A program made the translations under genes and the position numbers. A DNA stretch of 63,767 bases, counting the filler, from Octopus bimaculoides (taxonomy: Eukaryota), in NCBI RefSeq assembly GCF_001194135.2. It is 8 parts of 8 records of this genome, joined end to end, with 100 filler letters (N's around TTAATTAATTAA, not from the genome) between each part and the next. Parts side by side here need not be neighbours in the genome. Positions count along the whole stretch, not along the records: positions 18,340 to 44,416 come from NC_068982.1; 7 more parts are not named here. One strand, 5' to 3'. The notes under the pieces were generated by a model that was given only the letters and a program-made list of their open reading frames with translations, was not told the DNA's origin and did not search any database. Positions 5,815-39,670 of this stretch are shown piece after piece. The first letter of the stretch is position 1. The number at the start of each line of letters is the position of its first letter.

Positions 5815-6175
5815 TTTTTTTTTTTATTTCCCACAAAGGAAGAACACAGAGGGGACAACACAATCTGATATGGGGTCAGATACAACAAATGATTAAACAT
5901 AATTATGAGATTAAACATTTTTACAAATATATTAAAAAGTTCGAATGATGAGATATACAAGAGACATTACAAATGGTGTGGGGAGACGGGTTCAATTCGG
6001 ACCCCACGAGCCCCGCCTCACCACTGATTCTTTGAGTTCGTTCTGCGTTGCACTCATGCGGTCCCATCCATACGCAACATTCGTGCGACATTCTTCCATC
6101 GATTTTGAAACATTTTTGCAGACAGGCATTTTCTCTCTAGCCCTATTTTCCTTTTCAGGTGGAAGGTGAAGAAAT
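5815..6175 (-). mobile_element. 3' terminus of an L1/Tx1-like LINE with poly(A) tail
   Basis: Minus strand reads FTFHLKRKIGLERKCLSAKMFQNRWKNVARMLRMDGTA* (L1/Tx1 ORF2-like end), then a 3' UTR ending TTTGTGGGAAATAAAAAAAAAAA. Confidence 0.6.
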
Positions 6176-6836: not shown

Positions 6837-7908
6837 ACATGCATAGAGGTGTGACATTTTTGGTCGCATTTTATGTATTCCAGGACTTTGCTGCTTGTTT
6901 TGTTCATCGAGAATTCTTTAACTATCATCTGTTCGCATATAGCAAAAAAGTATGAACTTCAGGAGAACCACTCTACCTAAAGAGCAAATCCGTTTCCCGC
7001 AATACAAGCAAATTCCTCTCAGTGAACATATAGAAAAATATGCAGGTAACATCAAACTAAATTTCACAGTCTTCCCCTTCTACCAGTGCAAAAACACAAT
7101 CTCTCCACAAGAATGTTTAAATAAAGAAACTTTTTTCATTGAAAAATACAGAACACGTCTTAATATGCACGCATAACCAACTTTTAACTTTTTACATATT
7201 TCAATTCACGATTACATCACTGTACATAAATCCCCTCACTAAACAAGTGTCCCGAAATCCTTTTTTTTTTTTGTGTACATATATATTCCCTTCCCCTTAC
7301 CGAAAGCTGAACAGTTATCTCCCTTGCCCAGAACAACAACAATAATAACGATAACCAATTACTTCCCCTTATTTTTCTACTTGTGAAGTTATTCACTCGT
7401 AAATATTATCACACACAACATGNNNNNNNNNNNNNNNNNNNNNNNNNNNNNNNNNNNNNNNNNNNNNNNNNNNNNNNNNNNNNNNNNNNNNNNNNNNNNN
7501 NNNNNNNNNNNNNNNNNNNNNNNNNNNNNNNNNNNNNNNNNNNNNNNNNNNNNNNNNNNNNNNNNNNNNNNNNNNNNNNNNNNNNNNNNNNNNNNNNNNN
7601 NNNNNNNNNNNNNNNNNNNNNNNNNNNNNNNNNNNNNNNNNNNNNNNNNNNNNNNNNNNNNNNNNNNNNNNNNNNNNNNNNNNNNNNNNNNNNNNNNNNN
7701 NNNNNNNNNNNNNNNNNNNNNNNNNNNNNNNNNNNNNNNNNNNNNNNNNNNNNNNNNNNNNNNNNNNNNNNNNNNNNNNNNNNNNNNNNNNNNNNNNNNN
7801 NNNNNNNNNNNNNNNNNNNNNNNNNNNNNNNNNNNNNNNNNNNNNNNNNNNNNNNNNNNNNNNNNNNNNNNNNNNNNNNNNNNNNNNNNNNNNNNNNNNN
7901 NNNNNNNN

Positions 7909-7973
<65 letters not shown>

Positions 7974-8199
7974 GTATTTGTATATAGCATTGAAAGATTC
8001 ACTTTAATCAGAGTAAATATCGAAAAGTGAACAACTTTAGAATTTCTCAGACGATAAGATAATTCATTATAATCATCATTAAAATTTAAAATGACTTAAT
8101 CCCTTCCTCTAATCTCAGCTTTTCATCAAGAAATCTGTTAAATGCCACTAATGTACTTAAATTATACATCTAACATCATAAATCCTCTTCTCTCTTTCT

Positions 8200-8505
8200 T
8201 CGTCTTAATTTTGTTGCTGTTGTTGTTAGTGAGGTGGTTAAATGATGTGCGTTTGCGGTCAGTACTAGTGTTGTTGTTCTTGTCGTTGTTGTCGTTGCTT
8301 TTGTTGTATATGTTGTTGCTGCTGCTGCGTCTGCCGCTGCTGCTGCTGATGTTGTTGTTGTTGTTTTTGCTGTTGTGGTTGTTTTTCTCGTTGTCCTTGT
8401 TGCTAATGTTTGTGACAAGTAGCCTTTCGTTCTTGCTCATTTTGTGTTATTTCTACCACTACTACTACTTCCACTACTACTACTAATAATAATAATAATA
8501 ATATT
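8200..8505. repeat. Compound trinucleotide microsatellite (GTT/GCT/ACT/AAT)
   Basis: Visible successive triplet arrays. Confidence 0.9.
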
Positions 8506-27460: not shown

Positions 27461-28672
27461 CGAGGGTGGGCTGAAAAGTTCATAGGTTGACTATAAAAGG
27501 AGTGTGATGCTAGAGCTGTGAAATCTTGTAAGCATTAATTTCAACCCTTCTTATTAATAAACTGTTTTGGTTTCTGTCCCAGTAAACTAACATCTTACTA
27601 TTCAAAGACTTCAGAAGTAACTAGTTGCGACTTCTCTTGAAAATGGACAAAATTTGGCATCGTGGTGTTATCAGGTACCTATGGAAAAAGGGTTTAGCCC
27701 CCAAGGACATTGATACTGATATAGCTGTTACATTAGAGGATGACGCGCCAGCTTTATCAACAGTGCAAAAGTGGGTAACTGAATGTAGGTATGGAACGGA
27801 GAGTATTGAAGATGATCCAAGATCTGGACATCCTGCAACTGCCATCAGCAAAGCAAATGTTGATCGTGTTCACCACATGCTGATGGATGGCAAGCGATTG
27901 ACTATAAATAAAATAACGATTACTATTAGCATATTGCGTAAGAGAGTTGTCTTCAGGCACCTGATCAAAAGCGCACTAAAGTGATCACATCGGAGGAAAA
28001 TCTGACATGGTTTAAAGCAGATTCAGCTGGTTTCCTTCGACGTTTTCTAAGCTAGGATGAGTTTCGGGCTCATAACTTTGAGCCTGGGACAAAGAGGTAA
28101 TCCATGAGTGGAAACACGCCTCCTCAACTGTTCCAGGGAAGGCCAACGTCGTTTCATCTGCACGAAAGACGATGGCCTCAGGTTTTGGGAAGCAAAGGGC
28201 ATTAGGCATTGTGTTTCAAAAATACCACACAATCAACGGAGAGTACTATGCCAACTTGCTAAGGTAGATACGAAAGGCTATTAAGACCAAAAGCCCATGG
28301 AAACTGACAAAAGACATTTGTTTCATCAGGAAAAGTCTCCAGTACACATGTCCTTGTCTTCAATGGCTGCTGTGTGTGACTGTGGCTTTGAACTAGTTGA
28401 TCAGCCTCCTTATTCTTCTGACTTAGCTCCATCTGACTATCATCTGTTCCTTAAAATGAAAAAAACACTTGACTAGGAACCAGTATCGCAATGACAATGA
28501 TGAGATTTTTGACCAACACGTTAAAAGCTTCTTCACCAAAGGATCCAAGGACTGCATCACCGATGGAAGACGTGTATGGACCACAAGGGGAACTATGTTG
28601 AGAAATTTATCTCATTAGTCACATTCCATGAGAGTATCTTTGTCAGCCTATGAACTCTTCAGCCGACCCTCG
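27461..28672 (+). mobile_element. Mariner (DD34D-type) transposon, both ends intact, transposase pseudogenised
   Basis: TA-flanked TIRs CGAGGGTGGGCTGAAAAGTTCATAGGTTGAC / GTCAGCCTATGAACTCTTCAGCCGACCCTCG; MDKIWHRGVIRYL..., EDDPRSGHP, YSSDLAPSDYHLF; frameshifts and stops. Confidence 0.95.
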
Positions 28673-30228: not shown

Positions 30229-32312
30229 GTCTGTCTATTTATTCCTTGCCTGTTACAAACCATCAACTATGAGGTAAAACTTAGAAATATTTTTTTTTTA
30301 AGAATGCTGGTTTAACCGAAAGTAAATTGATATATAAGAAATAAACTACAAAAATAATCTATTACAGAAAATCAGGAACATTAAATATCAAAATCCCAAA
30401 TTTCCTGACATATTGTCACAATTGACGAATCGTTCTTACAAACAGAACTACGTCTAACTGATCTTCTTTCATAAAAGCTATTGTCTTATTCAATTATTTT
30501 GAGTACAGAACAATAGTCAAATTAATATCTGCGAAAATATAATAATTAAAATTATTTAAAGCATTATATTACATTTTTAAATTTAGTCATATTCGGAGTC
30601 GATATATTTTTACCGACTTTGACTCCGAGAACCCACTAATTGCTTTCGGCTCTAACCTCTTATCACCGATTTGGATCCCACAGACCTGGAAAGAAACCAA
30701 GCCATAAATAGACTGCACGAGCGCAACATAGTCCATCGACTCGCCTCTGTGTGTGTGTGTNNNNNNNNNNNNNNNNNNNNNNNNNNNNNNNNNNNNNNNN
30801 NNNNNNNNNNNNNNNNNNNNNNNNNNNNNNNNNNNNNNNNNNNNNNNNNNNNNNNNNNNNNNNNNNNNNNNNNNNNNNNNNNNNNNNNNNNNNNNNNNNN
30901 NNNNNNNNNNNNNNNNNNNNNNNNNNNNNNNNNNNNNNNNNNNNNNNNNNNNNNNNNNNNNNNNNNNNNNNNNNNNNNNNNNNNNNNNNNNNNNNNNNNN
31001 NNNNNNNNNNNNNNNNNNNNNNNNNNNNNNNNNNNNNNNNNNNNNNNNNNNNNNNNNNNNNNNNNNNNNNNNNNNNNNNNNNNNNNNNNNNNNNNNNNNN
31101 NNNNNNNNNNNNNNNNNNNNNNNNNNNNNNNNNNNNNNNNNNNNNNNNNNNNNNNNNNNNNNNNNNNNNNNNNNNNNNNNNNNNNNNNNNNNNNNNNNNN
31201 NNNNNNNNNNNNNNNNNNNNNNNNNNNNNNNNNNNNNNNNNNNNNNNNNNNNNNNNNNNNNNNNNNNNNNNNNNNNNNNNNNNNNNNNNNNNNNNNNNNN
31301 NNNNNNNNNNNNNNNNNNNNNNNNNNNNNNNNNNNNNNNNNNNNNNNNNNNNNNNNNNNNNNNNNNNNNNNNNNNNNNNNNNNNNNNNNNNNNNNNNNNN
31401 NNNNNNNNNNNNNNNNNNNNNNNNNNNNNNNNNNNNNNNNNNNNNNNNNNNNNNNNNNNNNNNNNNNNNNNNNNNNNNNNNNNNNNNNNNNNNNNNNNNN
31501 NNNNNNNNNNNNNNNNNNNNTATATATATATACACAAATATACTTGTGTGTGTGTGTGTTGCGTGATGTGTAACATGAACTTATAGCTGACTGTATGTAA
31601 AGTCTCTTCTATGCTCTGATGTATATGTCTAGGCGTGTGAGTGTGTGTGTATGTGTGTATAAGGTATGCTTGTGTGAATGCATCTATGTACGCATGTGTG
31701 TGTAAATGCTTGTGTGCATGTATTTATGTATGTATGTATGTATGTGTTTGTGCATATCTCCATACAGGATTAGCTGCTTAAGAAATGGAAATATACATTA
31801 GACACGCATAGTGTACACTTATGTTTTCTTAGACGATATTGAAGCAACTATCGATATAAGAGGACTTGCAGGATATAAACTTGCTTTTTTTTTAACTGTT
31901 TCTTTATTTCTTCAAGTATATTCGATGGCAGTTGAATATAGTCTATAGCTGTTTTTGGTTATTTCTTCCGGAAGAATCCAAAAAAGACAAGCTACTTGAT
32001 ATTTCAACAGATCGGTGAAGTTGTTTTAGTTAACTTATAGTAATAGTTTCTTGTTGACACAGAAGTAGTTTAGCATTGAGGGACTGTAAGATTATTCTAT
32101 ACTTTCGCTTCAGTGCAGTGTGAGATAAAAGTTTTAATTATCCGTGTAGATACTAGGATATAGTTAATGACTACATTGGTTATTTTTGTTATTGTTTAAT
32201 CTCAGATCCTGGGTGAAGTCGATGCATTGATCTTTACCATCAGCATTTCTTTTTTCATTAATAGGCATTTAAAACCAACGCTATAACTTTTAATATCATA
32301 TGTAGCTCACAA

Positions 32313-32760: not shown

Positions 32761-34215
32761 CAATATTATACGTAGCTCGAGAATAATAGCAATTTAATCA
32801 TTTATGGTAATATAGCAGTCTTTAGCAGCTATACATGGTAACCACATACTTACTGAATTAAATGAATAAATTAGAATCTAATTTGATAAAAGACTTGCAA
32901 CAATGCAACTGGGTACCATGACGTCTCAGTATTTAGCTTATAAAGAGCTGACTTATAATAAAAAGTGACTTTTAAACATAATTTAAAAACTTATAAATTA
33001 ACCACAATTTACATATATCCACATTGGTTCCTATAGATATCTTTCGATATACAATAATTTTTTGAGACAAGGAAACTATGAATATAGACCTGCATGGTTA
33101 GTTTCCCTTGGGATTTGATACGTTTGATCTTAAAATTGAATTTCTGCTGTTTTACTTAGAACTTGCATTGGCGCCGCAATTAGGTATCAACATCTCGTTC
33201 GTCATTAACATTACGAAGCTAAACGCAAACGAAAGTTGTGATATTAAACTGTTAAATCAGGAAGAAAGTTTTACAATCGATTTAGGCAACATTTGAAGCC
33301 TATTTTCAGCGTGGAACAATATTTCTTATGATGTATGATATATTAGCAGTCATTTATAGCCGGATTTCGGCTATTTCCAGTAGCTAACACTAAATGATCG
33401 ATGTTCACAAAAATATTAGTGCAGATTATTGCAACACAGCTTGTAAAAAGTCATGTTAATATAGCATAAGATGCTCTGTCTAAAAGGTTCACCATGATAT
33501 TATTGAACACGGCTAAAAACATTTCTTTATGCTACAAGGCACACCAATTTATTTTTAAAGAAGTGTTTTGATACATAAATAATATTTTATTTTATTTATG
33601 TATATCTTTTTATTTGAAAACAATATTCTCGTTGCACTCCAGAAATGTAACTTACAAAAGTTGTTCTTCCCTTTCACGTTATCTCAATCACTAGCAAACA
33701 TATACAAACGCATTACAGCCTTCACTCAGTAACACCCCACTTTTCATTTCCCATAACGTTACTCCATTTACTTAACAACACGCATCAACATACTATATTC
33801 CTGTCACTCCTCGACTACGCTTCTCCCTCGTCACTACGTTATACCCTTCACTCATTAACAAGACAGCATCTATAAAGTCGATCAACGCACTAAAAAGAGT
33901 AACTAAATCGACTCCAAATCACGCAACTGTTTAAAAAAAAACACCATATTAGAATACAAAAAGACAAGAGAATCAACGTCTCTTGTCTTTTGGTCGTTGA
34001 CAAGGTCACATCATTGATCAAAAAGTCTGCTCAGTCTGAGTTACCTGTAGGTTACTGTTATGTCTCAAGCTACTGCTATCTAGCACCTTCGGATGATCTC
34101 TACTCAACCGCTAAACAACTGCTACTCAACACACCTACCACGGCCAGACTACCTCTATTTATATGTCTTGGGAGATCCTACTTCTTCGCCTGGGGTCGTC
34201 GACACAACAGTTACA

Positions 34216-34301
34216 CAACAACAACAACAACAACAGCAACAACAACAACAACAGCAACAACAACAACAACAGCAACAACAGCAACAACAACAACAATAAC
34301 A
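34216..34301. repeat. (CAA/CAG)n microsatellite
   Basis: Explains the poly-Q, poly-T and poly-N ORFs. Confidence 0.95.
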
Positions 34302-34375
34302 AGTTTCGTACACAAATAAATCATAAGCACTTAATTATCACCACGTTGTCTTTTCTTTGTCGATGGAACGTTTAA

Positions 34376-34575: not shown

Positions 34576-34873
34576 TTTAGCTTACTGAACTTATATCACC
34601 TTCACCGAAACCAGTAGTATACAACCTTTACTTTAAAATAAACAGAAATTCTGTCCTCTAAATATTTATTATGCCTTATCAGTTGCTGAAATTTTGTTGA
34701 AGACTATTAATATTCATAGGTCGTTAGTAATGAACAATGACTAAATTAAAGTTGTAGGTGGACAATGCTTACGAATTGAAATGGAACTGGTTAAGATAAT
34801 TTTCTCACGCTGAAAGAAGGAAAAATAATGTCGCAAAAATTAGTGTAAAGGATTTTTTTTTTTGGTCTACCAT

Positions 34874-34881
34874 TGACGTCA
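34874..34881. promoter_or_regulatory. Palindromic CRE/ATF site TGACGTCA
   Basis: Exact consensus about 155 nt upstream of the beta-tubulin ATG; function not demonstrated. Confidence 0.35.
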
Positions 34882-34994
34882 TAATGACAACGTAAAACGT
34901 AAGAATTTTATTGGAAAATATTCTAACCATAATTTCTATCACTTCTCTCCAATTTTGTTGTCTCTAAAAATCCAGTCTAAAATAAGATACGGAT

Positions 34995-35029
34995 TTTTTC
35001 CTTTTTTTTTTTTTTCGAACCTTATACAG
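34995..35029 (+). promoter_or_regulatory. Candidate 3' splice site (polypyrimidine tract + CAG) of a 5'-UTR intron
   Basis: TTTTTTCCTTTTTTTTTTTTTTCGAACCTTATACAG|GAATAATATG. Confidence 0.55.
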
Positions 35030-35036
35030 GAATAAT

Positions 35037-36326
35037 ATGAGAGAAATTGTTCATATACAGATCGGACAATGTGGAAACCGCATTGGAGAGAGGTTCTGGG
35101 AATATATTTCGGACGAGCATGGAATTGATCCTCTAGGAAGGTTTAACGGAGATTCAGATCTTCAGATAGAAAGAATCAACGTTTATTTCAATGAGGCACG
35201 AATGGGGAAATACGTACCAAGGGCTATTTTAGTGGATTTAGAGCCTGCAGTATTAGATTCAATAAGAGGATCTCCTTTTGGACAATTATTTCGACCAGAT
35301 AATTTTGTTTTTGGTCAAGGTAGCGCATCAAATAATTGGGCCAAAGGATATTTTACTGAAGGCGCTGAGCTTTGTGATACTGTGTATGATATTGTACGAA
35401 AAGAAGCTGAAGGTTGTGATTGTATTCAAGGATTTCAACTGACTCATTCCATTGGTGGCGGCTCAGGCGGTGGTCTAGGAGCCTTATTAATGAGTAAAAT
35501 AAAAGAAGAATTTTCAGATCGTATTAATCTCAACTTCACTGTTATACCGTCACCGAAGGTCTCCGAAACTGTTGTAGAACCTTACAATGCTGTACTATCG
35601 ATAAACACGCTGGTGGATAATTCTAATGAAACAATGTGCTTTGACAACGAGGCACTTTTTAATATCTGCCATCGCACATTGAAACTGTCGCAACCTAGTT
35701 TAGAAGATCTAAATCACTTAATATCAACGACAATGTCTGGGATGACAACATGTTTTCGATTCCCAGGTCAATTAAACGCTGACCTTCGAAAGCTAGGAGT
35801 TAACATGATCCCATTTCCTCGTCTCCATTTCTTTATTCCGGGGTTCGCTCCTTTAACAGCACGCAGTATACAACCATATCGTGCAATGACAGTCCCAGAA
35901 TTGTCGCAACAAATGTTTGACGCCAAAAATATGATGGTTGCAGCTAACCCGCTAGACGGTCGATATCTATGTGCAGCTTGTATCTTCCGTGGAAGGTTAT
36001 CGATGAAGGAAGTAGATGAGCAGATGTTTAACATTCAAAATAAGAACAGTACATACTTTGTTGAGTGGATTCCGGATAACGTTAAAACTGCTGTGTGTGA
36101 CATACCGCCACGAGGACTTAAGATGTCAGCAACCTTTATTGGTAACTCTACAAGTATTCAAGCCCTTTTTAAGAGAATCATGGAGCAATATGATACAATG
36201 TTACGAAGACGCGCATTCTTGCATTGGTATACTGGAGAAGGAATGGAAGAAATGGAATTCACTGAAGCTGGATCCAATTTGGCTGATCTGATTTCAGAAT
36301 ACCAGCATTATGAGACAGTTCACTAA
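35037..36326 (+). CDS. Divergent intronless beta-tubulin lacking the acidic C-terminal tail (429 aa)
   Basis: Uninterrupted ORF; MREI start, [49 protein letters not shown]; colinear with canonical beta-tubulin numbering; ends EYQHYETVH*. Family certain, orthologue not assignable. Confidence 0.96.
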
Positions 36327-37249
36327 ACTGTACATCCACTGAGAGATTTATCAGACAGAATTTTGTAAATATTGTTGAAAAGAAGGATCTGATGTTAAAT
36401 GGAACGGGCCAGAAAACATGGAGGTTCCTTTGTGTCAGATATTTATTGTGATAAAACCTGATAAATCCTATTAGCTCTCTTCGATAGTTATTCCATTTAT
36501 CGCACTACAGAAATTAGCTAAATATCTTATCAGAGAACTTATTTATTAACATGAGTTTATATTATAATCTCTTTCTCTTTTTTCTTCTCTCCCTCCCTTT
36601 CTCCCTCTCTCTTTCTCTCTCCATAATATATTTCCTCTGCTGGATAAGATATTCATATCTTCATGTTAAACCACCCAACAATTTCTCCCCTTTGTGCTGA
36701 CTACTAAGAGTTTCATGTAGAATGAAATGCTCTTGTTAATTCGTACTCCATAACTCAGGTTCCATTCCTTCTTAAATTACTTCAAAGAAATAGTAATCAA
36801 TGTCCCTAATTTCTTTTCTTCATTCTCTGTCATTCCTGATATTAAATCCAACGTGGACTGGTGAGAGGAAAATATTCTGGTGTATTCTCAAAGAGAAACA
36901 GTGACAGTATCATGATGAGCTGTAGCCAGAAGAGTTTATGTATTTTCAGAGGCAAAGTATAAATGAGTCAAGGAAAGTCAATAAGAGCAAGGAAAGATAG
37001 AACGATACGATGGACCAGCGTCTCGTCCATAAGGGGAATATATGCACCATGGAAACCGGGAAACCGGCTCTTTCAGTCTATGACTCGAGAAGGAACATTA
37101 CTACTTAACTAAAAGCACACGGTGTTAAGTTTACCTCATATCTATATTTATTCTAAACGTGTGAACATATTTTATATACGTGGTATAATACACAAAAACA
37201 TGTACAAAGCCACCAGACAACCGGAAACAAAAGACAATGAGAAAGATAG

Positions 37250-38400
37250 ATACCGTCCTAAATCCCATTTCGGTCACGGAAGCAAATGCAAGCCCGCATC
37301 AGGAAACCTCCACACCCAAACATTAGACCCAACAAGTCCTTGGTACCGTGGAGCCACTAGAAGTTCCTGTCTCCAATGATTGTTGTTGTTGGCACTCCGT
37401 CGCTTACGACGTCGAGTGTTCCAGTTGATCTGATCAACGGAACAGCCTGCTCGTGAAATTAACGTGCAAGTGGCTGAGCACTCCACAGACACGTGTACCC
37501 TTAACGTAATTCTCGGGGATATTCAGCATGACACAATGTGACAAGGCTGACCCTTTGAATTACAGGCACAACAGAAACAGGAAGTAAGAGTGAGAGAAAG
37601 TTGTGGTGAAAGAGTACAGCAGGGTTCGCCAGCATCCCGTGCTGGAGCCTCGTGGAGCTTTTAGGTGTTTTCGCTCAATAAACACTCACAACGCCCGGTC
37701 TGGGAATCGAAACCGCGATCTTATGACCGCGATCCTATGACCGCGATCCTATGACCGCGAGTCTGCTGCCCTAACCACTGGGTCATTGCGCTGTCTCCGA
37801 TGATACCCCAGATATAACAGTCGGGGATGATTGCGTCAGGACCGTGAGGACCAACATGATGCTGGCGCCACATGATCACAAGGCATTTCTGGATCTTGTA
37901 GGCCAGGAACTATCTGCTCCTCACCAAGGAGAACTTGTACCTGATGTGTTTGTGTAAAACGTCTGGTAGCAGTCTTCACCACCTTGAGCTGTTCTGTGAT
38001 GACCCCCATCGATACGTTGCAGTTGTCATTGAGGTTCTGGACTTGCTATGCGGACTCTATCATGCTGAAAGCGTCTGACTTTTGAGAATGTTTCATGCTC
38101 TTGACCACGGATAACACATCTTTGACAGAATATTCCAGCTCTTTCCCAATCCGGAACACAAAGGGCTTGGCCCCTTTCAAGAAGCTGACAAAATCTAAGT
38201 GACTTTGGTGAGCAGCTAGAGAGACACCAAAAATGGCGTGCGACTTCATTTCCAGTAGATTGGAATTTTTTACGTTGATGTCTATCGATAAGCTTAAAAG
38301 AGTAATGCCAAAGTTAAAATTTGGCGGATGATGCGTAAGTTCGGCACTTTTCCATTGATGACCTGCGGAATCTTGCTCACAAATACTTAGCGCATTCTTT
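37250..38400 (-). mobile_element. Degraded coding-like relic, tentatively a non-LTR retrotransposon ORF1, interrupted by a B2 SINE
   Basis: Stop- and frameshift-broken frame ...KELEYSVKDVLSVVKS...MGVITEQLKVVKTATRR...YKIQKCLVIMWRQHHVGPHG..IIPDCYIWG; GC higher than flanks; family assignment is weak. Confidence 0.35.
37392..37790 (-). mobile_element. SINE group B2 with 14-bp TSD
   Basis: CTGTCTCC(A/G)ATGAT at 37367-37380 and 37791-37804; (TTG)n tail. Confidence 0.92.
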
Positions 38401-38461
38401 CTAGCCCCATCTCCCTGTCTCTTTCTATTTCTGTCTCTCTATCTCTGTTTCTGACTGTCTG

Positions 38462-38508
<47 letters not shown>

Positions 38509-39670
38509 ATATATATATATATATATATANNNNNNNNNNNNNNNNNNNNNNNNNNNNNNNNNNNNNNNNNNNNNNNNNNNNNNNNNNNNNNNNNNNNNNN
38601 NNNNNNNNNNNNNNNNNNNNNNNNNNNNNNNNNNNNNNNNNNNNNNNNNNNNNNNNNNNNNNNNNNNNNNNNNNNNNNNNNNNNNNNNNNNNNNNNNNNN
38701 NNNNNNNNNNNNNNNNNNNNNNNNNNNNNNNNNNNNNNNNNNNNNNNNNNNNNNNNNNNNNNNNNNNNNNNNNNNNNNNNNNNNNNNNNNNNNNNNNNNN
38801 NNNNNNNNNNNTCTTCTTCTTCTTCTTCTTCTTCTTCTTCTTCTTCTTCTTCTTCTTCTTCTTCTTCTTCTTCTTCTTCGTCTTCTTATCATTATTTTTT
38901 TTATGTTGCTTGCGATAGACATGTCTTTTAGGAGCTGCGTGTGCTTTGAAAAAATTATCGGATTACTTTTAGAAATGTTTTTTTTTTTTCTGTGTATTGT
39001 GGACCTCTTTATAGTGAGAGGTGAGAAGTTTCTTTTGTGGTTTCTATCAATTTTTTAAAGTCAGACTATTTGAAAAATAAAAAAAAAATGTAAGCATGGC
39101 ATCCACTGTGGAAGCGGCGGGATACGCCACTGTAAGTTTAACACACATCAAAAAATAAGATAAGCAGAAGACAATTAAGCATGCTAACACAGTCATTTAT
39201 ACTTTGAAGAAAAATACGCAGAAAAAACACAATTGCACAACAAATGAATACATTTGTAAACACAGATGCTGGTAATAGCTAAAATTTTCACAACGCAAAC
39301 AGTATCAAGGCAAGCTTTCTATTGTTACTAGCTAGAGAATGGTATTAAACAAGAGCTGTACCTCCAAAAGTAAAGAATCTTGGAAAGGTTGATGATACTA
39401 CCAAAGAAAAGTTAAGAGAGAAATGATGACGGATGATGCATAAATCATTAAATAAGGCAGTTTCCCGTTTATGACTCGCTGAACCTTGCTCACTAATAAA
39501 CACATAGCACATACGTTTGCGTCTCGAAAATTGGGAGGTCTTTCGATATGCTCTTTAGGAAGCTGACAGGTGTAATTTCCATTGACCGCAGATGGTTTTC
39601 AAAACTGGGAATGGGAAAGAAAGCAGGCAGAGTTGATGCGTCACACACCGCTCCAGACTAGTTCTACAAT

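What the first reader, a model, noticed from the sequence alone, without database searches (positions are those of the whole stretch)
35061..35710. Clustered substitutions around the exchangeable GTP site of this tubulin
Seen, using canonical beta numbering: Q15R, G71A/T72V, the T3 loop GQSGAGNN changed to GQGSASNN (G98S), the signature GGGTGSG changed to GGGSGGG (T143S, S145G), D177E in the T5 loop, and Y222L. Known: these loops contact the phosphates and ribose, Y222 stacks on the guanine base, and GGGTGSG is nearly invariant across tubulins. Q11, C12, N99, N204 and N226 are kept, so the pocket looks remodelled rather than destroyed. Inference: nucleotide affinity, exchange or hydrolysis may be altered, giving unusual dynamics or a structural or capping subunit.
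Basis: partly seen in the sequence, partly recalled or inferred. Interest (0 to 1): 0.75.

Follow-up and report, generated by a model that had tools for sequence, protein, structure and literature searches.

The report
Tail-less cephalopod beta-tubulin, rewired GTP pocket
This is an intact, strongly conserved, intron-free beta-tubulin gene found only in octopuses and cuttlefish, which lacks the usual acidic tail and has changed the residues that normally tell tubulin whether it holds GTP or GDP, much like odd beta-tubulins already described in a ciliate.

Summary
Raw clustering is not supported. Pocket loops are changed at 23%, the rest at 24%, and changes are spread evenly along the protein. 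The pocket has, however, lost its usual protection. It takes 10.8% of this protein's departures from consensus, against 3.4% in other divergent beta-tubulins. Five of the 14 states fixed across the whole clade lie in it.

The gene is not decaying. Intronless orthologues exist in three Octopus species, Argonauta and cuttlefish-group genomes. dN/dS is 0.014-0.08, and the flanks and a TGACGTCA promoter box are conserved.

Q11, N99, N204, N226, E181 and K252 are kept, so nucleotide binding is probably retained. The T3 loop, D177 and Y222, which relay the GTP signal, are all altered. Published Y222F tubulin nucleates about 1000 times faster, has a roughly 25-fold lower critical concentration and assembles even with GDP.

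My best reading is a non-axonemal, modification-free beta isotype that builds stable microtubules only weakly coupled to nucleotide state.

Tetrahymena BLT1/BLT4 carry changes at the same positions, so this is a new variant of a known kind. Expression and biochemistry were not tested.

The parts
35037..36326 (+). Single-exon coding sequence of a 429-aa noncanonical beta-tubulin (stop codon included)
   Evidence: ORF. Pfam Tubulin 2.3e-60 and Tubulin_C 3e-38. Gapless 1-426 match to solved beta-tubulins, E = 5e-233. AF2 model pLDDT 85, TM 0.92 to beta chains. omega 0.06-0.08 against other octopods.
35064..35081 (+). T1 loop, codons 10-15, GQCGNR (Q15R; K in Argonauta, Q in cuttlefish)
35235..35255 (+). 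T2 loop, codons 67-73, DLEPAVL (G71A, T72V, M73L), shared by all clade members. V72 and the aliphatic residue at 73 resemble alpha-tubulin DLEPTVI.
35313..35336 (+). T3 loop (gamma-phosphate sensor), codons 93-100, GQGSASNN (S95G, G96S, G98S). S96 and S98 are shared by all clade members and have frequency 0 in the panel.
35454..35474 (+). T4 tubulin signature, codons 140-146, GGGSGGG (T143S, S145G). Octopod-specific; cuttlefish keep GGGTGSG.
35547..35579 (+). T5 loop, codons 171-181, [11 protein letters not shown] (D177E). Argonauta has D177 with T178A.
   Evidence: role of D177
35700..35714 (+). Start of helix H7, codons 222-226, LEDLN (Y222L, G223E; N226 kept). L222 is shared by all clade members.
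   Evidence: role of Y222
36309..36326 (+). C-terminus ...YETVH plus stop. The protein ends at residue 429 with no acidic tail (3 residues after position 426, none acidic).
   Evidence: Truncation boundary YQDAT, from Joe et al. 2009 as quoted in PMC9048481.
34872..34885 (+). Conserved CRE-like box ATTGACGTCATAAT, 163 nt upstream of the ATG; candidate promoter element
   Evidence: Identical 14-mer at -155 to -182 in Octopus sp. 3 and Argonauta. Related GACGTCA boxes at -93 to -106 in cuttlefish. It is the only TGACGTCA in the window.
34837..35036 (+). Conserved 5' flank (promoter / 5' UTR candidate)
   Evidence: 70% identity to Argonauta over -200..-1, against 59% at third codon positions. No alignment further upstream.
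36327..36476 (+). Conserved 3' flank (3' UTR candidate)
   Evidence: 74% identity to Argonauta over +1..+150. No alignment beyond that.

Best explanation
The window carries a functional beta-tubulin paralogue specific to coleoid cephalopods. It is intronless, so it probably arose by retroposition.

Shown:
- It folds as a beta-tubulin.
- It keeps the MREI N-terminus, K252, and the residues that recognise guanine and the phosphates.
- It has been under strong purifying selection since before octopods and cuttlefish diverged.

Inferred mechanism:
- It still binds GTP, but the relay that couples nucleotide state to assembly competence is rewired.
- In canonical beta-tubulin the gamma-phosphate pushes the T3 loop. 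That breaks the D177-Y222(OH) hydrogen bond and flips T5 'out', which makes the plus-end surface ready to assemble.
- Here Y222 is Leu, so there is no hydroxyl and weaker stacking on guanine. T3 has Ser in place of Gly96 and Gly98. T2 is alpha-like (AVL). D177 is Glu, or T178 is Ala in Argonauta.
- Octopods add T143S, S145G and Q15R/K.
- The latch that holds GDP-tubulin in the inactive 'in' state should therefore be missing.
- Expected result: low critical concentration, fast nucleation, few catastrophes, weak dependence on GTP, and probably faster nucleotide exchange.

Tail loss:
- The protein also lacks the acidic C-terminal tail, the EGEF axoneme motif and Gly56.
- It would then be excluded from axonemes, escape polyglutamylation and glycylation, and interact differently with tail-dependent partners.
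- Together these features point to stable, specialised non-axonemal microtubule arrays in a restricted cell type. Germline or spindle arrays are the leading guess, by analogy with Tetrahymena BLT1/BLT4.
For: Gene is real and constrained:
- Intact 429-432-aa single-ORF orthologues exist in three Octopus species, Argonauta hians, two close sepiids (one is Acanthosepion esculentum) and a more distant relative.
- The clade is monophyletic (NJ bootstrap 94.5%).
- omega is 0.077 and 0.062 in octopods and 0.014-0.038 in the cuttlefish group.
- Flanks and a CRE-like box are conserved.
- The AF2 model has pLDDT 85 and TM 0.92 to beta chains.

Pocket:
- A71, V72, S96, S98 and L222 are fixed in all members.
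- Essentials are retained, and N204/N226 are invariant even in 40 very divergent beta-like tubulins.

Mechanistic analogy from experiments:
- The D177-Y222 bond holds T5 'in' in GDP-tubulin, and T3 movement on GTP binding releases it.
- Y222F Drosophila tubulin has a critical concentration of 0.19 uM against 4.7 uM.
- Its nucleation is about 1000 times faster and it has fewer catastrophes.
- It assembles with GDP.

Tail:
- The protein ends exactly at the ...YQDAT-equivalent residue.
- This is reported as the shortest betaIII truncation that still assembles.

Precedent:
- Tetrahymena BLT1/BLT4 have G71A, T72V/L, G96P, G98E, Y222L, G223K, C12A, T178K and A254S.
- They lack axoneme and polymodification motifs.
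- They go to nuclear and spindle microtubules, not cilia.
Against: - No expression evidence was obtainable. The short public contigs that carry the gene look genomic.
- No biochemistry was done.
- Leu is not Phe. Loss of aromatic stacking could lower nucleotide affinity enough to destabilise the dimer rather than stabilise the polymer.
- Several changes are mild or seen in ordinary isotypes: T143S keeps the hydroxyl, S145A occurs in 6% of the panel and D177E in 12%.
- G96S and G98S lie on the longitudinal interface and could hinder, not help, dimer addition.
- In raw density the pocket is no more substituted than the rest of the protein.
- Retroposition is inferred only from the lack of introns. 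No poly(A) remnant was seen in the sequence read, target-site duplications were not searched for, and the parent gene structure was not examined.
Confidence: 0.55

Rival explanations
1. An ordinary, if divergent, beta-tubulin isotype whose pocket substitutions are functionally near-neutral. Microtubule dynamics are normal, and any specialisation lies in the missing tail or in expression pattern only.
For: - Substitutions are spread evenly.
- T143S and D177E are conservative.
- S145A, D177E, G71A and T72V occur at low frequency in ordinary beta-tubulins.
- The same positions vary freely in many divergent beta-like tubulins.
Against: - S96, S98 and L222 have frequency 0 in the 48-protein panel, yet have been fixed across the clade since before octopods and cuttlefish split.
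- Even the milder Y222F has large measured effects and causes human disease.
- The pocket's share of changes is three times that of other divergent isotypes.
Confidence: 0.25
2. A poorly polymerising or chain-terminating beta-tubulin. It would act as a plus-end cap, an alpha-tubulin sink or a regulatory subunit, because its plus-end surface (T3, T5) and nucleotide site no longer support addition of the next dimer or GTP hydrolysis.
For: - G96S and G98S put side chains into the glycine-rich T3 loop at the inter-dimer interface.
- Y222L removes base stacking.
- The T2 and T3 loops drift towards alpha-like sequences: alpha has DLEPTVI and EDAANN.
- There is no tail for the usual partners.
Against: - Most of the remaining sequence is kept: the T7 loop (residues 241-252) is unchanged apart from the clade-wide A254G just after it, Y281 in the M-loop is kept, and H11 and H12 differ only at K392R, E412G, M415L and N416A.
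- The Y222F analogue enhances assembly.
- Tetrahymena BLTs with harsher changes at the same sites do incorporate into microtubules.
- The protein ends just at the minimum length compatible with assembly.
Confidence: 0.1
3. A decaying processed pseudogene whose substitutions simply reflect relaxed constraint.
For: - The gene is intronless.
- Substitutions are spread evenly over the protein.
- The conserved tail is lost.
Against: - The ORF is intact, 429 aa in the four octopod sequences and 432 aa in the cuttlefish group.
- Synonymous divergence is saturated between octopods and cuttlefish (pS 0.86-0.89), yet dN is only 0.16-0.20.
- omega is 0.014-0.08 within each lineage.
- Non-coding flanks and a promoter box are conserved.
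Confidence: 0.02

Closest known systems
Tetrahymena thermophila noncanonical beta-like tubulins BLT1 and BLT4 (Pucciarelli et al. 2012, PMC3382179)
   Same: - Substitutions at the same pocket and interface positions: G71A, T72V/L, G96, G98, Y222L, G223, C12, T178, A254.
- Loss of the EGEF axoneme motif, the Gly56 motif and the poly-Glu modification sites.
- Interpreted as altering the GTP cycle.
- Used for a subset of non-ciliary microtubules.
   Different: - Independent origin: a ciliate, not an animal.
- BLTs are 56-65% identical to the canonical isotype and keep GGGTGSG and a long, non-acidic-motif C-terminus.
- The cephalopod protein is 75% identical to canonical beta, has essentially no tail, and in octopods changes the signature to GGGSGGG.
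- Localisation of the cephalopod protein is unknown.
Y222F beta-tubulin: engineered Drosophila beta1 (Ayukawa et al., bioRxiv 10.1101/2020.03.05.979989; PDB 6TIU), human TUBB Y222F (CSC-KT), and natural Phe222 of plants and protists
   Same: The Tyr222 hydroxyl that latches D177 and T5 in the GDP state is lost. Measured consequences are faster nucleation, lower critical concentration, fewer catastrophes and GDP-dependent assembly.
   Different: - Here the residue is Leu, so aromatic stacking on guanine is also lost.
- The change comes with changes in T2, T3, T4 and T5 and with tail loss.
- Effects here are predicted, not measured.
Ordinary metazoan beta-tubulin isotypes (e.g. Mactra antiquata beta-4B-like, bovine beta-2B)
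   Same: - Same fold and length up to residue 426, without indels.
- MREI start, K252 and N204/N226.
- The T7 loop, Y281 of the M-loop and most of H12.
   Different: - About 25% of residues differ.
- GGGSGGG, S96/S98 and L222.
- No acidic tail.
- No introns.
Alpha-tubulin N-site loops
   Same: - T2 has Val72 and an aliphatic residue at 73: alpha DLEPTVI, clade DLEPAVL.
- T3 lacks the two glycines: alpha EDAANN, clade GSASNN.
- Argonauta T178A matches alpha VSTAV.
   Different: - The protein is unambiguously beta (K252, best hits, tree).
- The resemblance is limited to a few loop residues.
- It does not by itself imply a non-exchangeable or non-hydrolysed nucleotide.

Membership tests
Beta-tubulin (eukaryotic tubulin/FtsZ superfamily) | Tubulin GTPase domain plus tubulin C-terminal domain, with the whole fold | tested here: met
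   Pfam PF00091 2.3e-60 and PF03953 3e-38. AF2 model pLDDT 85, TM 0.92 to solved beta chains.
Beta-tubulin (eukaryotic tubulin/FtsZ superfamily) | Closer to beta than to alpha or gamma; Lys252 in T7 where alpha has the catalytic Glu; MREI N-terminus | tested here: met
   Best PDB hits are all beta, at 75% identity with no gaps. K252 is present. Alpha shows ...DLTEFQ... at that place. The protein starts MREIVH.
Beta-tubulin (eukaryotic tubulin/FtsZ superfamily) | Signature motif GGGTGSG | tested here: not met
   GGGSGGG at codons 140-146 in all four octopod sequences. Cuttlefish orthologues keep GGGTGSG.
Beta-tubulin (eukaryotic tubulin/FtsZ superfamily) | Nucleotide-contact residues Q11, N99, E181, N204, N226 | tested here: met
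   All are present. N204 and N226 are invariant in 40 divergent beta-like representatives.
Beta-tubulin (eukaryotic tubulin/FtsZ superfamily) | Tyr222 (conserved in animal beta-tubulins; Phe in plants and protists) | tested here: not met
   Leu222 in every clade member. Tyr in 48/48 panel sequences. The statement on conservation is from PMC7491153.
Beta-tubulin (eukaryotic tubulin/FtsZ superfamily) | Acidic, Glu-rich C-terminal tail that carries polyglutamylation and glycylation sites | tested here: not met
   Three residues (TVH) follow position 426, none acidic. A canonical example has 21 residues with 12 acidic.
Axonemal beta-tubulin | EGEF-type axoneme motif in the tail and Gly56 in the (S/T)G(G/A) motif | tested here: not met
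   There is no tail. Residues 55-57 are RMG. The motifs are as defined in PMC3382179.
Noncanonical beta-like tubulins (Tetrahymena BLT type) | Substituted GTP-pocket positions 12/71/72/96/98/222 together with loss of axoneme and polymodification motifs | tested here: met
   Compared position by position with Table 1 of PMC3382179.
Noncanonical beta-like tubulins (Tetrahymena BLT type) | Common descent with the ciliate BLT genes | not tested
   BLT sequences were not in hand. The cephalopod clade sits at 75% identity to metazoan canonical beta, and no members outside coleoids were found, so convergence is the likely relation.
Noncanonical beta-like tubulins (Tetrahymena BLT type) | Restricted incorporation into non-ciliary (nuclear or spindle) microtubules | not testable with these tools
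   This needs localisation or expression data.
Processed retrogene | Uninterrupted coding sequence in genomic DNA | tested here: met
   A single ORF in the window, on the Argonauta chromosome-scale contig and on a 53-kb ENA contig of the cuttlefish-group orthologue.
Processed retrogene | Intron-containing parent gene, poly(A) remnant, target-site duplications | tested here: inconclusive
   No A-run follows the stop codon in the sequence read. Target-site duplications were not searched for. Such marks would be eroded at this age. The attempt to fetch a canonical octopus beta-tubulin locus failed.
Pseudogene | Frame disruptions or dN/dS near 1 | tested here: not met
   ORFs are intact in all species, and omega is 0.014-0.08.

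The most novel reading that the evidence does not exclude
Coleoid cephalopods have kept, since before octopods and cuttlefish diverged, a natural beta-tubulin whose assembly is largely uncoupled from the GTP/GDP switch (no Y222-D177 latch, altered T3 sensor) and which carries no modifiable tail. The same residue set was hit independently in ciliate BLTs. That would define a recurrent alternative state of the exchangeable site, used to build non-dynamic, modification-free microtubule arrays.
Probability: 0.3. Interest if true: 0.7.

Novelty: new variant of a known kind. Interest (0 to 1): 0.45.

Why it matters
Dynamic instability depends on a small relay (T3 loop, D177 in T5, Y222) that has so far been probed mainly with engineered or disease point mutants. 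This gene is a natural experiment.

- It is an animal beta-tubulin that is 75% canonical elsewhere.
- It has changed every element of that relay and lost the tail.
- It has still been kept under strong selection in two deeply diverged cephalopod lineages.
- The same positions changed convergently in Tetrahymena BLTs.

If the predicted behaviour holds, it would give the field a ready-made variant. That behaviour is easy nucleation, rare catastrophe, assembly with GDP, and no polyglutamylation. Such a variant could be used to separate nucleotide sensing from polymerisation and to study what tail-free microtubules do in vivo.

If the behaviour is normal, it would show that these near-invariant residues are more replaceable than assumed.

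Tried and rejected
1. Expression evidence.
- Short public contigs carry the Octopus sp. 3 and cuttlefish genes. They share end points across runs but have no poly(A) tail or signal at the ends.
- One run, ERR12945500, is described only as 'short reads' used for a chromosome coverage analysis.
- I treat these contigs as genomic, not as transcripts.
- Run accessions SRR11869390/91 and ERR3431203 are not in the literature library.
- No paper mentions 'tubulin beta-2 chain-like' in octopus.
- The O. sinensis gonad study reports a female-biased 'tubulin beta chain-like' gene, which cannot be equated with this one.

2. More clade members. A profile search found none beyond Octopus, Argonauta and the cuttlefish cluster.

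3. Canonical octopus beta-tubulin locus (to test for parental introns). A search with the published octopus tail peptide returned only last-exon fragments from a short-intron, nematode-like genome. This was a dead end.

4. Structure.
- The first AF2 run, on a shallow 34-sequence alignment, gave pLDDT 54 and was discarded.
- The second, with 79 sequences, gave pLDDT 85.
- No ligand can be modelled and no coordinates are returned, so 3D distances to the nucleotide could not be computed.

5. Literature on signature-motif mutants (T143G) is not in the library. From memory, yeast tub2-T143G lowers GTPase activity and dynamics. I did not use this as evidence.

6. A Biopython bootstrap run timed out. 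I replaced it with a faster numpy implementation.

7. The 50%-identity representative library gave many fused or fragmentary models. Only 40 near-full-length divergent beta-like sequences were used.
Full report
**What is there.** Window 35037..36326 (+) is one uninterrupted ORF of 429 codons.
- It scores as a Tubulin GTPase domain plus a Tubulin C-terminal domain.
- It aligns without a single gap to solved beta-tubulin chains over residues 1-426, at about 75% identity and E = 5e-233.
- An AlphaFold2 model built on a 79-sequence alignment is confident (pLDDT 85, pTM 0.88). It superposes on solved beta chains at TM 0.92.
- The protein starts MREIVH and has Lys252, where alpha-tubulin has the catalytic Glu. 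It is therefore a beta-tubulin.
- It stops at ...EYQHYETVH. Three residues follow position 426, none of them acidic. A canonical beta has about 21, of which 12 are acidic.

**Checking the observation.** I compared the protein with the consensus of 48 ordinary full-length beta-tubulins.
- Four changes were not named: M73L, S95G, G96S and G223E.
- Q11, C12, N99, N204 and N226 are kept.
- R15, S96, S98, S143, G145 and L222 never occur in the panel.
- A71 (2%), V72 (4%) and especially E177 (12%) do occur, and S145 is Ala in 6%.
- A bivalve beta-tubulin (Mactra antiquata) is canonical at all of these sites. The changes are therefore not an ordinary mollusc trait, although only this one mollusc sequence was checked.

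**Is it clustered?** Not in raw density.
- 102 of 426 core residues differ from consensus. The rate is 11/47 (23%) in the nucleotide loops T1-T6 plus the start of H7, and 91/379 (24%) elsewhere.
- Among conserved columns the odds ratio is 1.4-1.9, p about 0.3.
- Changes are uniform along the chain (p = 0.64).

The pattern is still unusual in two ways.
- Other divergent beta-tubulins spare the pocket, and this one does not. The pocket takes 11/102 of its changes, against 26/775 pooled for the 15 most divergent ordinary beta-tubulins (OR 3.5, p = 0.002; those sequences are not phylogenetically independent).
- The oldest fixed changes favour the pocket. Of 14 derived states shared by all clade members, five are pocket-loop positions (A71, V72, S96, S98, L222; p = 0.012). 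Among columns at least 95% conserved it is five of nine (p = 0.004).
- The loop boundaries are mine, and the second result weakens if T2 positions 71-72 are excluded.

**Not decay: a conserved cephalopod gene family.**
- The identical protein clusters with O. sinensis XP_029649444.1 (98% identity) and with a third Octopus-like species (96.5%).
- Argonauta hians has a 429-aa orthologue (85%), also a single ORF on a 57-Mb contig.
- A 432-aa relative (75%) occurs in runs that a cuttlefish genome paper identifies as Acanthosepion esculentum, in a near-identical sepiid, and on a 53-kb ENA contig of a more distant relative. It is intronless there too.
- The seven sequences form one clade (NJ bootstrap 94.5%). 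Long-branch attraction cannot be fully excluded. However, the shared derived residues, the short tail, the lack of introns and a related promoter box all agree with a single origin.
- Nei-Gojobori dN/dS is 0.077 (Octopus vs sp. 3), 0.062 (Octopus vs Argonauta, dS 1.3) and 0.014-0.038 within the cuttlefish group.
- Between octopods and cuttlefish, synonymous sites are saturated (pS 0.86-0.89) while dN is only 0.16-0.20.
- About 200 nt upstream and 150 nt downstream of the ORF still align between Octopus and Argonauta, at 70-74% identity. Third codon positions are only 59% identical, and nothing aligns further out.
- No further members were found outside coleoids.
- The window is probably Octopus bimaculoides. 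This is an inference: the exact protein is in EukProt and differs from the O. sinensis sequence.

**Which changes are old and which are octopod-specific.**
- Clade-wide: Y23, F36, A71, V72, S96, S98, N190, F202, L222, T231, G254, V301, R392, G412, and the short tail.
- Octopod-only: S143 and G145 (the GGGSGGG signature), R/K15, and R19, F106, N197, F208, N304 and others.
- C12 is not held in the clade. It is Ser in Argonauta and Gly in cuttlefish.

**How it probably works.**
- Crystal structures show that in GDP-tubulin the T5 loop is held 'in' by a hydrogen bond between Asp177 and the hydroxyl of Tyr222.
- When GTP binds, its gamma-phosphate displaces the T3 loop (the Asn99 amide).
- The new T3 position is incompatible with T5 'in', so T5 flips 'out' and the plus-end surface becomes ready for the next dimer.
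- Y222 also stacks on guanine and bonds the ribose.
- Removing only the hydroxyl (Y222F, Drosophila tubulin) lowers the critical concentration from 4.7 to 0.19 uM.
- It raises nucleation about 1000-fold and reduces catastrophes.
- It also lets GDP-tubulin nucleate and elongate.
- Human TUBB Y222F is pathogenic, and Tyr222 is otherwise conserved in animals.

In the cephalopod protein every element of this relay is altered.
- L222 has no hydroxyl and no aromatic ring.
- S96 and S98 replace the T3 glycines.
- D177 is Glu, or T178 is Ala in Argonauta.
- T2 is AVL.
- Octopods add T143S, S145G and a basic residue at position 15.

The residues that actually hold the nucleotide are intact. I therefore infer a beta-tubulin that binds GTP but lacks the GDP-state latch. 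It should assemble easily, rarely undergo catastrophe and be weakly nucleotide-dependent, probably with faster exchange.

The missing tail points the same way.
- The protein ends exactly at the position equivalent to ...YQDAT. That is reported as the shortest betaIII truncation that still assembles normally (Joe et al. 2009, quoted in PMC9048481).
- Without the tail, the EGEF motif or Gly56, it should be excluded from axonemes and cannot be polyglutamylated or glycylated.

All of this is inference. No expression or biochemical data were obtainable.

**Comparison with what is known.** The closest precedent is Tetrahymena BLT1/BLT4.
- Their published substitution table lists G71A, T72V/L, G96P, G98E, Y222L, G223K, C12A, T178K and A254S. 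These are the same positions.
- They have also lost the axoneme and polymodification motifs.
- GFP fusions go to macronuclear and micronuclear spindle microtubules, not to cilia.
- In 40 unnamed, very divergent beta-like tubulins from the 50%-identity library, the same second-tier positions vary repeatedly: R/K15, S96, L/I/F222, S143, G145. N204 and N226 never vary. One of these proteins (P0216) even has R15 plus GGGSGGG.
- Remodelled E-sites in noncanonical beta-tubulins are therefore a known kind.
- What is new here: an animal lineage, much higher overall conservation (75%), essentially complete tail loss, the lack of introns, an altered signature motif in octopods, and demonstrable long-term purifying selection.
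- The gene is annotated only as 'tubulin beta-2 chain-like'. It is not discussed in a survey of cephalopod beta-tubulins or elsewhere in the searched library.

**Rivals.**
- A near-neutral ordinary isotype remains possible (0.25). Several changes are mild and the spread is even.
- A capping or non-polymerising subunit (0.1) has only the T3 interface changes in its favour.
- A pseudogene is excluded.

**Verdict.** The sequence observation is right. The 'clustering' is real only relative to normal beta-tubulin constraint. This is a new variant of a known kind and is moderately interesting.

Noticed in passing
window 34872-34885 (also L001 about 5846-5859; L003 about 101-114; L002/L007/L006 at -93 to -106 from the ATG): A perfect CRE-type palindrome within ATTGACGTCATAAT lies 155-182 nt upstream of the ATG in all three octopod sequences. 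Related GACGTCA(C/T)AA boxes lie about 100 nt upstream in the cuttlefish-group genes. It is the only TGACGTCA in the piece. This is a candidate bZIP (CREB/ATF/CREM-type) promoter element. A tissue cannot be inferred from it.
   Followed up: partly
window 34837-35036 and 36327-36476: Non-coding flanks next to the ORF align between Octopus and Argonauta at 70-74% identity, higher than third codon positions (59%). Sequence further out does not align. This suggests constrained UTR or promoter sequence. No AATAAA or ATTAAA occurs within about 500 nt after the stop in octopods (first ATTAAA at +515 in Octopus, +474 in Argonauta).
   Followed up: partly
window 36309-36326: The protein ends exactly at the residue equivalent to the last T of ...YQDAT. 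This is the shortest C-terminal truncation of betaIII reported to assemble normally. Cuttlefish orthologues extend only three residues further (…DATVDD).
   Followed up: partly
P0216 (unnamed 436-aa protein from the 50%-identity library): A very divergent beta-like tubulin (46% identity) independently carries R15, GQSGSANN and the same GGGSGGG signature as the octopod protein. Its source organism is unknown.
   Followed up: no
codon 12 (window 35070-35072) and its orthologues: Cys12, usually conserved at the E-site, is kept in Octopus but is Ser in Argonauta and Gly in the cuttlefish group. Tetrahymena BLT4 has Ala here.
   Followed up: no
L006 (ENA ERZ21867824 ctg91465l) 7124-8422: This genomic copy is 97-98% identical in protein to the sepiid sequences but only about 84% identical in DNA (dS about 1.05-1.09, omega 0.014-0.017). 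It therefore comes from a clearly different, unidentified species. The public gene call (491 aa) starts 59 codons too early.
   Followed up: partly
window 27625-27984 (+): A 119-aa ORF has weak, below-threshold matches to the Mos1 transposase HTH and a homeodomain-like HTH. It is probably a mariner-type transposon remnant.
   Followed up: partly
window 34215-34302; 38410-38505; 38812-38887; 37712-37760: Microsatellites flank the gene: (ACA)x29 about 740 nt upstream, a TC-rich array, (TCT)x25, and a 14-nt unit repeated 3.5 times downstream. The piece also holds nine runs of N (10-760 nt), for example 30761-31520 and 38530-38811, so the surroundings are incompletely assembled.
   Followed up: no
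PMC11202624 (O. sinensis gonad transcriptome): A 'tubulin beta chain-like' gene (EVM0022450) is reported as strongly ovary-biased (FPKM 3211 against 85). Whether it is this locus or a canonical isotype could not be determined.
   Followed up: no
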